Shown: positions 39,526 to 44,456 of the stretch, one piece after another
Position numbering within the stretch: position 1 is the stretch's first letter
How the letters are laid out: each line of letters begins with the position of its first letter
Assembly (NCBI RefSeq): GCF_000315625.1
Contig: NW_005434653.1
Span: 353,745-417,744 of the forward strand
Length of the DNA stretch: 64,000 bases
DNA from: Guillardia theta CCMP2712
Taxonomy: Eukaryota; Protista; Cryptophyta
Direction of reading: 5' to 3'
Position numbers and translations under genes: made by a program
Notes under the pieces: model-generated
Told to the model about the DNA's origin: nothing
The model's input: the letters and a program-made list of their open reading frames with translations, nothing else
Database searches by the model: none

Positions 39526-40701
39526 TGGGCATTCCAGTCTATTCTGAATATTGCAGGTCATTTTCGGGCTCTTTATCTGAAAAATTCAATCAATTGTTTG
39601 AGTAAAGCTCCGGTAGCAACCGTTCCCCACTGAACCCGGTGACCGTTTCACTGTTCACGACGGTTCAACTTCCGGCTCGGAGCGGGCCGGCTGGGCGCCC
39701 GGCGGCCCGCCGCCCCGCCGGGCCTAAGACCGCTAACTAAGTTCGAGTCCCCCAGAGCAAAATCCAATTTTCCTGGTACTAATTTTAGTCAACACATCTC
39801 GGGCGATTTGAAATCTTCCATGGATTTCTATTAAAAGTGAATTATAAACAAAATCTTTTCAGACGAAAAGCAATCTTCAGATTGCATTTCCCCTAGGCAC
39901 CGATGGACATGCAGCAAGCGACATGATGCGAGGATCATGATGAATGGGAGGAGGAATGATCTGAAGACGACTACGACGACGGATGGCAGTCTTCGTGCAT
40001 GTTAAAGCGTCTCAAAGGGCATGAACATTTATCAAAATGACCTATAGAATCGCCCATAATGCCACTGGAAGGCGAGCTCTCTCAACATGCAGAGGAAGAT
40101 TTGACAGGTATACATGGGTAAAACCTCTTTAAACTAATAAGAGGCTTTCGAATCTTTGAAACCAAACTCTTTACAATATGGATTCCTTCTCACCTTCCAC
40201 CCCAGGTCGCTAGTATCCGCCCTTTTTTCCAACGATGCCACCCCTCCTTCCTTCCTTGCCTCCATCTCCTTTGCCGCAGTTCGTTTCTTGCCAGCCTGAG
40301 CATTCTTTGGTACTTTCAATAGCAAGTTTCCTAAAGAACGGGTCCACTAGCCTCCATGACAGTAGAAAGCACTCTCAGCCAACACAAAGTTGTGTTCCAG
40401 AATCTCGTTTCCTTCAGCCCCCCCCGGCTCCCTCCCTGTGTCATCGGGAGACAACCAACATGTATAATAGAGGAAAAGTTTGCATATATGCGCTCGGAGC
40501 AAGAGGAACCAAACTATCAGCACACGCTGTGTCTCAACTTTCGTTCGCATCCGCCATGTGTGCGATGATGGAGATGGCTGGGAATTTGAACACAAACGAT
40601 GACAAAAATAGCAATTTACACTCTAAAAACGGATTCAAACTAAATTGTTGTATTTTTCAAATAAATTTCAGGGTCTGCAATATTCCAGGATTTTGTTGCC
40701 A
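39526..40701. mobile_element. Decayed inverted-repeat-bounded element (possible non-autonomous DNA transposon)
   Basis: 39541-39602 aligns, with gaps, to the reverse complement of 40634-40691 (shared GAATATTGCAG ... TTTATYTGAAAAATWCAA ... CAATT ... GTTTGA); the interior has only stop-interrupted frames. Confidence 0.5.
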
Positions 40702-41303
40702 ATCCGAGGCTCAGCGGCTGCTCTCGCGTTAGGCGAACCTTACCCCGGCGAGGGGGTCACCGATCGGACCTCCAGCCGATGCCAGTCACTGTCAGTGTAC
40801 TACGGAGTCACTAGTCCGATCACTGATCGGACTAGGCCCGGCGGGCCCGGACCCAGTGATCGGACCGTCGTACAGGGTCGCGCCTCCCGGCACACCCCGC
40901 CGGGGCTGGCCGGGGCGCGCCGTGGCCGCACTGTTGGATGAGGCCCGGGCCGGGCCGGGCCGGGCCGGGCCGGGCAGGCCCTCAGGGCCTGGTGGACTCA
41001 GGCTGTCCGCCCGGCCGGCCGCCGAGCACTGGCCTGCCGCAGTGCGGCCGGTCGGGGGTGCGCAGTGCGGCACCGTGACTGCAAGGTCGCATTCCGGAGA
41101 TGCGCATGCCATGCGTGCAGGCGCATGAAGATTGCTGCAGGAGAGAAGGAGACACGAACATAAGTCTAGCTCTGTCTCGATCTCCCTGGTAGAGTGACTT
41201 CATCCAACGGGAGCTGACGTAAGTTTCCGTTGTTCTCTCGTCGAGATATTCGGAGGTGAGGGGATTGAGCGTCCAAGGACAGCGTCCAAGGACCTCCGAC
41301 ACG

Positions 41304-42532
41304 ATGGTCGAGAAACCTCCTCATGTGCTGTCATTGCTTCTTGCGCTTGTTGTTGGGTGCTCGATGGAGACAAATAATGGAATGCAATCACAATGTGATC
41401 ATCGATATTGTGCAGGGTTCCACAAACCTATATATGGGACAAAGGAAACGAGGCATGCGAGTACAACTTCTATCCACTTGACCCTCATGCTTAAAGGATA
41501 TGGTCCAAAGGCATCAGCGAGTGGTGGAAAACAGAAAGCCATTAAAAAGATTGTGGAGGATAAGACGTTTGGGCTGAAAAACAAGAAGAAGAGTAAAACT
41601 GTTCAAAAATTCGTCAAGTCCGTCGAAATTCAGGCCAAGAACATGGTTATTGATGCGAAAAAAGCAGAAATGAAGCGGGCAAAGAAGGAGGAGGCGAAGA
41701 GGCAAGAGGCTGAGATGGCCATGTTGTTCAACACACGCACTGAGGGCTCCAAGGATACCACGAAAGAAAGTGATCAACAGATAGAGAACGGAATGACTGG
41801 GAAGGAACTTTTGGAAGACTATGAGTACCAAAGCTCAGTGCAGGTTATTTCTTCGCCACTTTTGATTTTCTGGCTGTGATATGATATTCCACAGGCATTG
41901 ACACGATCTGATATTGACAAACCCTTGGGAGAGATCACTGTAGACCAAGAAATTGAGGAGCTCCGAGCAAAAGTAAATGAGAGTGAAAAGATTCCGATTG
42001 ACAAGCAATGGTAATCATGCTTTGGATACGAATGTCAATTTTTCTTGTTTGTAAATCACTTACACCATGTATGTAATCGTAATTCGCAAGGTTCGACGAG
42101 TGGGTACAGAAGAACATCTTGAAGAACTACACAAAGGCCGAGAAGAAGGCAGCGAACAGAATCGCCAAAAAGACTGGGAAGCAGGTTGGAATCGGTACTC
42201 CTTCTGACACCGGGACTAAGTTCTGGTCTTGAAGATATTTATGGAGGCCAAGGATTCAAATCAATTCAAAGATGATGATGAAGTGGATGAAAACTGGTTT
42301 CAAAGGTCCACATATTTTCATTCGATGATTGATGTTTGATGCTACACCAATCCTCCAGACGGAGCACTGACTCTTGGGACTCTAATGAGGATGACTCCAC
42401 CGAAAAGCAGGTTGCTCATGACATGCTTGTTTTACACGTTTTCTTGAGTGACGTTGAGTCTTGTTCTTCGACCAGGATGACAACGAGGTTTCCGAACTGA
42501 TAGATGGAGTTTCGAAGTTATCTACTGGTTGA
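41304..42532 (+). CDS. DFRP1/Tma46/ZC3H15-like DRG-regulatory protein lacking CCCH fingers, with N-terminal signal/transit-like extension; 5 introns
   Basis: KKIVEDKTFGLKNKKKSKTVQKFVK is the Tma46/ZC3H15 N-terminal signature. Spliced EITVDQEIEELRAK...IPIDKQW/FDEWV...KTGKQ/IF...FKDDDE matches the DFRP C-terminal domain. Stop codon at 42530-42532. Confidence 0.85.
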
Positions 42533-44456
42533 CCGTGAGGTCCAGTGCTTCAAGCCTCAAGAAACAAGTGCTACCCCCATTCTATCAAAGATGTCAGACT
42601 CATGGGTGATACTGGAGTCCAGCATTGCAGCTCGCAAGTCTTCTATATCAGGTTGCTGACACAGATTTCGGATCCTCAAGGCCGGTCGGAAGGGCTTCAT
42701 ACGCTGCATGAGGCTGGGAGCTCACGAAATGGATACAGACTTCCGTTACCTATCGACGGAGGGCAGTTGCTCAGCAACCAAAATCCTTGACACTTCTGGA
42801 AGATTTACTGCAAAGCCTCCTACACCCGGCAATATCGCTTTGTGATGGCCATCAGCGGCCTCAAATCAGTCTAGTAGACCCCCAAACGAAAAGTTTGAAA
42901 TGGATGCCAGGGCGAGTTCTCCCAGGAATGACATGACTCAGTGATGTGGCCTCACTGGGCCGGGCCGGGGCCGGGGCCCGAGGCTCGGACTCGGTGAGCC
43001 GGTACGGTAGCCTTCAAGCGGCGGGCCGCCGAAGTTGCGCTGCGGGACTCGACTCAGTCGACCAGGATCAAGGCGGCTAATAGTGCCACGATGCCACCGT
43101 CACTACTTTGAGAGCCAGTGGGATACGGTCGGAGGTCAGCTGATGCGGCAGGCCCTGAGCCTCTGGCGGCATGATGCGCGAGCCTCTCTGCTTCAATAAA
43201 CCGAACTCCCCCGCCCTGCTACCGTACGGTACGTCCGAAGTTGTGCTCAGATCTGCTACGTCTTTGGCTCGGAGGCTCGGAGGCTCCTCAGTCAGGTTGC
43301 CGCACGGGCCGCCGCCCGGCCGAACCGTTGACTCGGTCCTGCGCGGCCCGGGCCCGGCCGGGCGCCCCCGGGCCCGGCCCGGCGGGCCCGGCGGCGGCGG
43401 GCCCGGCCGGCCATTGTAAGTTAAGATAAAAATCATTACGACGGCAAGAAGAGAAAAGAACGTACAGCGAGCCACCAAACCTAATCCTCAGTGCCAACTG
43501 CTGTCCCCCAAACTTAACTGATACCTTCCGGCACTCAACAGCGCGGCGCGCAGGACCATCCCCCCCGCGCCATGGCGGGCCAGCCGCGGATCGGATGTCG
43601 TGACACGCATCATGGCATATTGTTACGCGATGATGGCAGCCGCGGAAGGACAGGGAGGCCTGAACTAGTAAGCTGTGTTAAGCTGACGAACAGGCTTCCG
43701 ATTTCGGAAAGATCCTGGACCGGATGCGTTTGCAAGTCGGATCGATACCTGAGATGTCTTGCGAGGCCGAGAGACCTCCAGCGCTGCCGTTTCCTTGTCG
43801 GTAGTTACTAGACGTGATGACTGCCGCGGCTGCGGTGCTACCAGGGGTGAAAGGAAGGTGAGTCTAAGGGTGGGTGGGCCATCGGGAGCAATATAGTAGG
43901 GAGGGGTGGTATTCTACGGTAAGATCGTAGGGTAGGCGTGTCCACTTATCATAAGTTATCCCCCAGCAACCATTGGATCGGATGGGAAATGAGTACCCCC
44001 AGGGTCTCTTACACCCCCCTTTGATCTTGTCTTATTGGGGGTACACTTGATTTTTTCTTCAACATTCTACGAGAACAAGATTTGACTAAAGTTGTGTCAT
44101 GAGGCAGTTGATGGGGTTGATCGAGTATAGGATCGCAAGATGGCGATGAGCGTTGGCATTGCAAACAGACATTGAGGTGCTTGTATGTTCGCATGCATGC
44201 TGACAGCCTTGCTCTCCTCTTCCTTCCAGCACCTCACTGCCTGCTTGATTGCTCTCACTTTGTTTCTTCCATCTTGTGCTCGCACTTAGAGATGTTGTGC
44301 TCTGTACCTGTTGAACCTGGGGAGTCTGTGTAGTCGTACTGGATTTTGATTTGACGTTTGCTATGGCTTTGACGCAATGACGATGCATATAGCTAGACAA
44401 GATCCTCCATGCCATGACATAACTCAACAGGTCACTGCTTGTCAGGTTAAACTCGA

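What the first reader, a model, noticed from the sequence alone, without database searches (positions are those of the whole stretch)
41304..42532. Zinc-fingerless Tma46/DFRP1 with a secretory-type presequence: candidate import into the periplastid (nucleomorph) cytosol
DFRP1/Tma46 is a cytosolic partner of the ribosome-bound GTPase DRG1/Rbg1 and normally has two CCCH fingers. Here the N-terminal and DFRP domains are kept but no CCCH is visible between them. About 65 extra residues precede the normal start: a hydrophobic core (VLSLLLALVVGCS), no Phe at +1, and a transit-like stretch ending LTLMLKGYG. A cytosolic translation factor with a signal peptide makes most sense if sent to the remnant endosymbiont cytoplasm, giving the host control over nucleomorph 80S ribosomes (inference).
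Basis: partly seen in the sequence, partly recalled or inferred. Interest (0 to 1): 0.7.

Follow-up and report, generated by a model that had tools for sequence, protein, structure and literature searches.

The report
Periplastid-targeted zinc-fingerless DFRP1 paralogue
This Guillardia theta gene is an expressed second copy of the ribosome-factor partner DFRP1/Tma46 that carries an import leader, and it is most likely sent, together with a leader-bearing DRG1 GTPase, to the remnant red-algal cytoplasm around the plastid; this is one more case of a known way of supplying that compartment.

Summary
Window 41304-42532 (+) is a six-exon gene of 309 codons. It matches Guillardia theta GUITHDRAFT_136644 at 100% identity.

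- **Expression:** RNA contigs from three studies splice all five introns as modelled. They reach 180-220 nt upstream of ATG 41304, so the leader is in the mRNA.
- **Protein:** it keeps the DFRP1 N-terminal motif and the DFRP domain. It has no cysteine after residue 36, so it has no CCCH fingers.
- **Leader (about 67 residues):** it has a short hydrophobic core at residues 8-18, small-residue cleavage candidates at 18-20 with C, S or M next, and a roughly neutral stretch.
- **Conservation:** the Hanusia phi orthologue keeps such a leader (29% identity, against 80% in the mature part). It has no Met at the alternative start. Two metagenomic orthologues have leaders too.
- **Paralogues:** a leaderless copy on another contig starts MPPK and is also fingerless, so finger loss is not specific to this copy. 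Of three DRG genes, one DRG1-type copy carries a similar leader.

Periplastid import is well supported but not localised experimentally. "Host control" is over-read. The leader ends in LKGYG, exactly where normal DFRP1 proteins start. This resembles the ubiquitin-tail-like leader end that this scan already noted on other DNA of this genome. The gene is a new member of a known kind.

The parts
41081..41303 (+). 5' untranslated leader of the mRNA (minimum extent). It holds short upstream ORFs starting at ATG 41100, 41106, 41111 and 41125, all ending before 41304.
   Evidence: RNA contigs start at 41081 (X1), 41102 (X2) and 41122 (X5). ATG list.
41304..41363 (+). Signal-peptide-like segment, residues 1-20. 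The n-region is MVEKPPH and the h-core is residues 8-18. Cleavage candidates lie after residues 18, 19 and 20. The start codon has a strong context, GACACGATGG.
   Evidence: the Hanusia orthologue has the same layout
41364..41504 (+). Transit-peptide-like stretch, residues 21-67, with net charge about +1. It diverges fast (29% identity to Hanusia) and ends in the L-x-L-K-G-Y-G motif at 41490-41504.
41505..41843 (+). Rest of exon 1: the mature N-terminal DFRP1 region with the invariant EDKTFGLKNK (41556-41585), a basic coiled stretch and the orthogroup motif EDYEYQSSVQ. It contains no cysteine.
41895..42010 (+). Exon 2, start of the DFRP (DRG-binding) domain.
   Evidence: splice junctions; Pfam DFRP_C on public model P0001 residues 193-250
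42091..42184 (+). Exon 3, middle of the DFRP domain.
42235..42305 (+). Exon 4, end of the DFRP domain and acidic DDDE stretch. The public model misses it because it reads through intron 3.
   Evidence: matches the Hanusia P0003 sequence
42359..42410 (+). Exon 5, acidic tail.
42476..42532 (+). Exon 6 with the stop codon TGA at 42530-42532.
42533..43054 (+). 3' untranslated region (minimum extent).
   Evidence: RNA contigs run on to 43054 (X2), 43076 (X5) and beyond 43100 (X1)

Best explanation
The gene encodes a nucleus-encoded, periplastid-compartment (PPC) version of DFRP1/Tma46. Translation starts at ATG 41304. The short hydrophobic signal peptide takes the precursor into the ER lumen around the complex plastid. 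The following non-aromatic, non-acidic transit-like stretch takes it across the second membrane, the SELMA route of red-lineage complex plastids, and it stays in the PPC. The leader is probably removed near ...LKGYG|PK, which leaves a protein that begins where ordinary DFRP1 begins. In the PPC its DFRP domain should bind and stabilise a co-imported DRG1-type GTPase, the leader-bearing gene at G000:C2. The pair should then act on the nucleomorph-derived 80S ribosomes as Rbg1-Tma46 does in yeast, relieving paused ribosomes. The leaderless paralogues on C82 (DFRP1) and C139 (DRG1) serve the host cytosol. Shown here: gene structure, expression of the leader, conservation of the leader, the paralogue pattern and absence of fingers. 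Inferred: the import route, the cleavage site, the DRG1 pairing and the ribosomal role.
For: - The mRNA contains the leader, and all introns are confirmed in three studies.
- ATG 41304 has A at -3 and G at +4. ATG 41487 has a weak context and is preceded by eight other ATGs.
- The window matches GUITHDRAFT_136644 of G. theta at 100%.
- The Hanusia phi orthologue P0003 has a leader with a hydrophobic core at residues 8-18 and has Ser where G. theta has the internal Met. The leader is 29% identical and the mature part 80%.
- Metagenomic orthologues P0004 and P0022 share the orthogroup motifs and have hydrophobic leaders.
- The leaderless paralogue on C82 starts MPPK with a stop codon just upstream.
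- There are three DRG loci. C3 scores best against Rbg2 (175 vs 171.6 bits). C139 and C2 score best against Rbg1 (271 vs 257.5 and 95.9 vs 80). Only C2 has a leader (MRFSVML..., core 7-17, VGSS cleavage candidates), and it is complete through the TGS domain.
- The targeting rules come from papers. A signal peptide plus a transit-like part, with an aromatic residue at +1, is needed for the stroma, and a negative net charge blocks passage (PMC3017844). About 2,400 nucleus-encoded PPC proteins are estimated, and cytosolic plus PPC paralogue sets of aminoacyl-tRNA synthetases are known in G. theta (PMC4494062).
- P0003 matches yeast Tma46 at residues 11-75 and 197-316, skipping the finger region.
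Against: - No localisation data exist, and SignalP or ASAFind could not be run.
- The cleavage site, and hence the +1 residue, is only a rule-of-thumb call.
- Contigs cannot show the true transcription start or rule out a minor shorter transcript starting near 41487. The raw-read run gave only 13 reads.
- The C2 DRG1 leader is read from genomic DNA only, with no RNA check.
- In yeast, deleting the Tma46 finger region abolishes ribosome binding (bioRxiv 10.1101/2020.07.06.190082), so how a fingerless DFRP1 reaches ribosomes is unexplained.
- Whether nucleomorph genomes encode their own DRG or DFRP could not be checked. No paper found mentions one.
Confidence: 0.72

Rival explanations
1. The upstream reading frame is incidental. 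The functional protein starts at ATG 41487 (MLKGYGPK...) and is a second cytosolic DFRP1.
For: ATG 41487 lies in frame just where canonical DFRP1 proteins start. A metagenome gene call, P0002, starts there. Contigs cannot exclude a shorter transcript.
Against: Hanusia has Ser-Leu-Arg at this place and no Met, yet keeps an open 66-residue leader with the same hydrophobic core. ATG 41304 has a strong context, and eight ATGs precede 41487. All three RNA contigs include the leader. A cytosolic copy already exists on C82.
Confidence: 0.07
2. The leader is only a signal peptide or membrane anchor. The protein ends in the ER lumen, is secreted, or sits on an endomembrane.
For: The only firm feature is an N-terminal hydrophobic core. 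Transit-like parts have no strict consensus (PMC3017844).
Against: A DRG partner has no known role outside a ribosome-containing cytoplasm. The core of 11-13 residues is too short for a typical membrane span. About 45 further non-conserved residues follow and are kept in length in Hanusia. A DRG1 paralogue has the same two-part leader. There is no ER-retention ending.
Confidence: 0.08
3. The protein is sent on to the plastid stroma, or goes to two places (PPC plus cytosol, by two starts).
For: The leader has the two-part layout that stromal proteins also use, and its net charge is slightly positive. Dual targeting is known for G. theta aminoacyl-tRNA synthetases (PMC4494062).
Against: No aromatic residue lies at any candidate +1 position, 19-21, which the stroma route needs in cryptophytes (PMC3017844). 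The stroma has bacterial-type ribosomes, for which DRG/DFRP has no known role. A dedicated cytosolic copy makes a second start unnecessary.
Confidence: 0.08

Closest known systems
Yeast Tma46 / human ZC3H15 (DFRP1), partner of Rbg1/DRG1 (PDB 4A9A, 7RR5)
   Same: Both have the N-terminal basic motif with EDKTFGLKNK and a C-terminal DFRP domain. The Hanusia orthologue aligns to Tma46 residues 11-75 and 197-316 and passes the Pfam DFRP_C cut-off at 30.2 bits.
   Different: The two CCCH fingers (Tma46 residues about 76-196) are absent, although the finger region is needed for ribosome binding in yeast (bioRxiv 10.1101/2020.07.06.190082). A leader of about 67 residues is added. The branch is very long, 2.59 changes per site.
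Leaderless fingerless DFRP1 of G. theta (G000:C82) and of other protists (for example Cafeteria roenbergensis P0038, MMETSP P0026, P0014/27/28/40)
   Same: They share the N-terminal motif, the DFRP_C domain and the absence of cysteines and fingers, with lengths of 256-320 residues. They fall on the same side of the tree as the window gene.
   Different: They start MPPK or MAPK 16-24 residues before the motif and have no leader. The window copy shares only 47% identity over 72 N-terminal residues with C82.
Nucleus-encoded PPC-targeted paralogues of cytosolic translation proteins in G. theta (aminoacyl-tRNA synthetases, Gile et al. 2015, PMC4494062; about 2,400 predicted PPC proteins, Curtis et al. 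2012 as cited there)
   Same: The pattern is the same: a cytosolic copy plus a copy with a signal peptide and a transit-like leader that lacks an aromatic +1 residue.
   Different: No paper found names DRG1 or DFRP1 for the PPC. Here both subunits of a heterodimer carry leaders. No GFP test exists, unlike for tyrRS1.

Membership tests
DFRP1 / Tma46 / ZC3H15 | Conserved N-terminal basic segment with EDKTFGLKNK | tested here: met
   The motif is invariant in the alignment of 11 sequences. It is present at residue 85. The Hanusia orthologue P0003 matches Tma46 residues 11-75.
DFRP1 / Tma46 / ZC3H15 | Two CCCH zinc fingers between the N-terminal segment and the DFRP domain | tested here: not met
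   There is no CCCH pattern and no cysteine after residue 36. RNA shows no extra exon. The alignment shows a gap of about 110 residues against finger-bearing P0012.
DFRP1 / Tma46 / ZC3H15 | C-terminal DFRP domain (Pfam PF16543) | tested here: inconclusive
Public model P0001, which lacks exon 4, scores 22.0 bits against a cut-off of 27.5 and is cut at profile position 57. Single exons score nothing. The 80%-identical Hanusia orthologue scores 30.2 bits and matches Tma46 in 4A9A.
DFRP1 / Tma46 / ZC3H15 | Binds DRG1 and stabilises it | not testable with these tools
   The DRG1 (C2) and DFRP exons are split by introns, so no unaltered contiguous chains were available for complex prediction.
Cryptophyte nucleus-encoded periplastid-compartment proteins (two-part leader) | Cleavable N-terminal signal peptide | tested here: met
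   The hydrophobic core at residues 8-18 has mean Kyte-Doolittle 2.93, with small residues at -3/-1 for cuts after 18, 19 or 20. The leaderless paralogues score 1.1-1.2 at most. These are simple rules only; SignalP was not run.
Cryptophyte nucleus-encoded periplastid-compartment proteins (two-part leader) | Transit-like stretch without an aromatic residue at +1 and without negative net charge | tested here: met
   The +1 candidates are C, S and M, and the net charge of residues 21-61 is about +1. The rule is from PMC3017844.
Cryptophyte nucleus-encoded periplastid-compartment proteins (two-part leader) | Leader conserved in other cryptophytes, plus a leaderless cytosolic paralogue | tested here: met
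   Hanusia phi P0003 and metagenomic P0004 and P0022 have leaders. The C82 paralogue has none.
Cryptophyte nucleus-encoded periplastid-compartment proteins (two-part leader) | Localisation in the PPC (blob-like GFP signal, proteomics) | not testable with these tools
   An experiment is needed.

The most novel reading that the evidence does not exclude
The remnant red-algal cytoplasm keeps its own complete DRG1-DFRP1 ribosome-pausing rescue module, imported as two leader-bearing subunits and working without the zinc fingers that yeast needs for ribosome binding. Its leaders are cut at a ubiquitin-tail-like Phi-[RK]-G-(x)-G site by a deubiquitinase-type peptidase coupled to the ERAD-derived import machine. 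That would release a protein starting exactly at the canonical N-terminus.
Probability: 0.22. Interest if true: 0.65.

Novelty: new member of a known kind. Interest (0 to 1): 0.4.

Why it matters
- **A new factor class for the PPC.** The gene adds a ribosome-associated GTPase module (DRG1 plus its regulator) to the factors the host must import to keep the nucleomorph's 80S translation running. Both subunits have been given leaders. I found no paper naming DRG or DFRP for this compartment.
- **A natural finger-deletion variant.** Fingerless DFRP1 is the only form in G. theta and occurs in other protists, although the finger region is required for ribosome binding in yeast. This gives a natural variant in which to ask what else anchors the complex.
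- **A testable cleavage site.** The leader ends precisely at the canonical N-terminus with a ubiquitin-tail-like motif. This gives one more alignable case for testing the leader-end signal that this scan noted on other DNA of this genome.
- **A corrected gene model.** The public model has a wrong C-terminus.

Tried and rejected
- **Pfam on single exons** found nothing useful because the exons are too short.
- **A third, finger-bearing DFRP1 in the genome was not found.** The DFRP_C profile, the window's N-terminal part and a canonical finger-bearing DFRP1 (P0012) all find only C21 and C82. A weak CCCH hit on C3:334811 is an unrelated multi-finger protein.
- **Origin could not be decided.** A maximum-likelihood tree of 36 family members puts the window-Hanusia pair on a 2.59 branch inside the fingerless group, with long-branch warnings and no named red alga. 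Red-algal versus host origin stays open.
- **A nucleomorph-encoded DRG or DFRP could not be checked.** Three nucleomorph papers mention none in their main text, their supplementary tables are not held, and the assembly searched is nuclear.
- **Curtis et al. 2012 is not in the library**, so I could not check whether protein 136644 is in its predicted PPC list.
- **The raw-read RNA run gave only 13 reads**, so no transcription start was mapped.
  - The third word-index protein search and the exhaustive representative search were not run. They are costly, the length window would exclude a leader-bearing DRG1 of about 423 residues, and the protein is not otherwise open.
  - Complex prediction was not run because no contiguous unaltered chains exist for the G. 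theta DRG1.
  - The joined RNA-based protein was not sent to any search tool.

Full report
**What is there**

The window is Guillardia theta nuclear DNA. Exon 1 is 100% identical to hypothetical protein GUITHDRAFT_136644 of strain CCMP2712 (P0001), which agrees with earlier notes of this scan. The stretch 41304-42532 on the + strand is a six-exon gene of 309 codons. The exons are 41304-41843, 41895-42010, 42091-42184, 42235-42305, 42359-42410 and 42476-42532.

RNA-derived contigs of three runs from three studies (X1, X2, X5) lie on it without a mismatch. They skip exactly the five GT..AG introns of 51, 80, 50, 53 and 65 nt. The contigs begin at 41081, 41102 and 41122, which is 180-220 nt upstream of ATG 41304. 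They are separated by a stretch of zero depth from the upstream gene's contigs, which end at 40509-40682. They show no intron between 41304 and 41487. The leader-coding part is therefore in the mature mRNA. Contigs cannot show the true start or rare isoforms, and the one raw-read run gave only 13 reads.

The public model keeps the leader but reads through intron 3 and ends wrongly.

The joined RNA-based protein was never sent to a search tool.

**The protein**

After residue 67 the sequence is a DFRP1/Tma46 relative.
- The family's invariant EDKTFGLKNK motif is at residue 85.
- The Hanusia phi orthologue P0003 is 80% identical over 183 mature residues. It matches yeast Tma46 twice, at residues 11-75 and 197-316, skipping the finger region. 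It passes the Pfam DFRP_C cut-off at 30.2 bits against 27.5.
- The truncated public G. theta model reaches 22 bits.
- There is no cysteine after residue 36, and the 51-nt intron 1 leaves no room for a hidden finger exon. The zinc-fingerless description is correct.

**The leader**

Residues 1-67 have no counterpart in 35 other family members, whose Met1 lies 16-24 residues before the motif.
- The leader has a short n-region, a hydrophobic core at residues 8-18 (mean Kyte-Doolittle 2.93) and small residues that allow cleavage after 18, 19 or 20.
- The next residue would be C, S or M. A roughly neutral stretch of about 45 residues follows.
- An 11-13-residue core fits a cleavable signal peptide better than a membrane span.
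- ATG 41304 has A at -3 and G at +4. The in-frame ATG 41487, where a canonical protein would start, has a weak context and lies behind eight other ATGs.
- Hanusia phi keeps an open 66-residue leader with the same layout but has Ser-Leu-Arg where G. theta has Met-Leu-Lys, so the downstream start does not exist there.
- Leader identity between the two species is 29% (E 0.22), against 80% for the mature part. This is the usual signature of a targeting peptide.
- Two metagenomic orthologues, P0004 and P0022, share the orthogroup motifs E-[ED]-YEY and WFD-[EQ]-W. They also have hydrophobic leaders and no fingers.

**Paralogues and partner**

The genome has one other DFRP1, on G000:C82. It starts MPPKASKK directly after a stop codon, has DFRP_C at 49.6 bits and also has no fingers. 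A canonical finger-bearing DFRP1 used as query finds only these two loci. Eight of the 35 other family hits are cysteine-free as well, among them one from Cafeteria roenbergensis. Finger loss is therefore not special to the leader-bearing copy.

There are three DRG genes.

| Locus | Best PDB match (bits) | Start | Reading |
|---|---|---|---|
| C3 | Rbg2 175 vs Rbg1 171.6 | canonical MGIKEKIAEI | DRG2-type, no leader |
| C139 | Rbg1 271 vs Rbg2 257.5 | MSASAQRIAAIEEE | DRG1-type, no leader |
| C2 | Rbg1 95.9 vs 80 and 108.5 vs 102.7 | 56-residue extension before the canonical start | DRG1-type, with leader |

The C2 extension is in the same exon as the canonical start. It has a hydrophobic core at residues 7-17 and VGSS cleavage candidates that are again non-aromatic. 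The gene is complete through the TGS domain. Both subunits of the DRG1-DFRP1 pair thus exist in a leaderless and a leader-bearing version, whereas DRG2 has one version. The C2 leader was read from DNA only.

**How it most likely works**

In cryptophytes, nucleus-encoded proteins for the complex plastid carry a signal peptide and then a transit-like part. An aromatic residue at +1 is needed to go on into the stroma, and a negative net charge blocks passage (PMC3017844). About 2,400 nucleus-encoded PPC proteins are estimated. Most aminoacyl-tRNA synthetases of G. theta come as a cytosolic, a PPC and an organellar copy, and one PPC leader has been verified by GFP (PMC4494062).

The window gene fits this pattern feature by feature. 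The PPC is the only place behind the ER membrane that has 80S ribosomes, which a DRG1-DFRP1 pair needs (PMC3510508; bioRxiv 10.1101/2020.07.06.190082). I therefore put 0.72 on periplastid import and action with the C2 DRG1 on nucleomorph-derived ribosomes.

The rivals are each under 0.1:
- a cytosolic protein made from ATG 41487;
- a purely secretory or ER destination;
- a stromal or dual destination.

"Host control" of those ribosomes is not required by the data. Plain supply of a housekeeping factor explains them.

**Open points**

In yeast, removing the Tma46 finger region abolishes ribosome binding of the complex (bioRxiv 10.1101/2020.07.06.190082). How fingerless DFRP1s, here and in other protists, reach ribosomes is unknown.

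The tree puts the window-Hanusia pair on a very long branch (2.59) within the fingerless group, with long-branch warnings. No red-algal sequence was identified, so the origin is undecided.

I found no paper that links DRG or DFRP with nucleomorphs or the PPC. Nucleomorph gene tables and the Curtis et al. list were not available.

**Leader end**

In all four orthologues a single Phi-[RK]-G-(x)-G motif ends 17-21 residues before the invariant motif, exactly where canonical proteins have Met1. The motifs are LKGYG, LRGYG, LRGG and LRGGG. The C2 DRG1 leader has LRLWGGG.

Earlier notes of this scan on other DNA of this genome (s1-431663, s1-434682) describe a ubiquitin-tail-like Phi-RGG ending of PPC leaders. 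Here the two metagenomic orthologues fit it strictly, and G. theta and Hanusia fit only a variant with an inserted Tyr. No paper holds both 'periplastid' and 'LRGG'. This is a lead, not support; cleavage there is untested.

**Verdict**

The gene is a new member of a known kind, of moderate interest.

Noticed in passing
G000:C2, locus L007:3508-5270 (+): A complete DRG1-type GTPase gene whose first exon adds a 56-residue leader before the canonical MSDAQRRIMDIEVEMARTQKNK start. The leader begins MRFSVML, has a hydrophobic core at residues 7-17 and contains LRLWGGG. It is the likely periplastid partner of the window gene. There is no RNA check.
   Followed up: partly
window 42185-42234 (intron 3) and public protein P0001: The public model GUITHDRAFT_136644 (265 aa) reads through intron 3 and ends ...VGIGTPSDTGTKFWS. 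RNA contigs splice it and add exons 4-6, giving 309 aa and completing the DFRP domain.
   Followed up: yes
window 41490-41504; P0003 62-66; P0004 71-74; P0022 117-121: The leaders of all four orthologues end in L-[KR]-G-(Y/G)-G, 17-21 residues before EDKTFGLKNK, which is where canonical DFRP1 starts. This resembles the ubiquitin-tail-like leader end that this scan noted elsewhere in this genome.
   Followed up: partly
G000:C82, locus L001:1075-1860 (+): The host-type DFRP1 of G. theta is also zinc-fingerless. Cysteine-free DFRP1 proteins of 256-320 aa occur in other protists (Cafeteria roenbergensis, an MMETSP transcript, several metagenome clusters), even though the finger region is needed for ribosome binding in yeast.
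   Followed up: partly
window 40945-40981, 42960-42990, 43351-43398: GC-rich (CCGGG)n-type simple repeats flank the gene on both sides and pair as imperfect inverted repeats about 2.4 kb apart. The reads tool skipped 40936-40984 as a repeat.
   Followed up: no
window 41100-41190: Four upstream ATGs open short reading frames of 5-30 codons in the 5' leader of the longest RNA contigs. They might modulate translation of the main frame.
   Followed up: no
L020:1065-2634 (marine metagenome contig) and L016:1187-2383 (aquatic metagenome contig): These are GC-rich (59-65%) genomic contigs of unidentified eukaryotes. They carry orthologues of the leader-bearing, fingerless DFRP1 with leaders ending LRGG. 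They are probably other cryptophytes, but their taxonomy was not established.
   Followed up: partly
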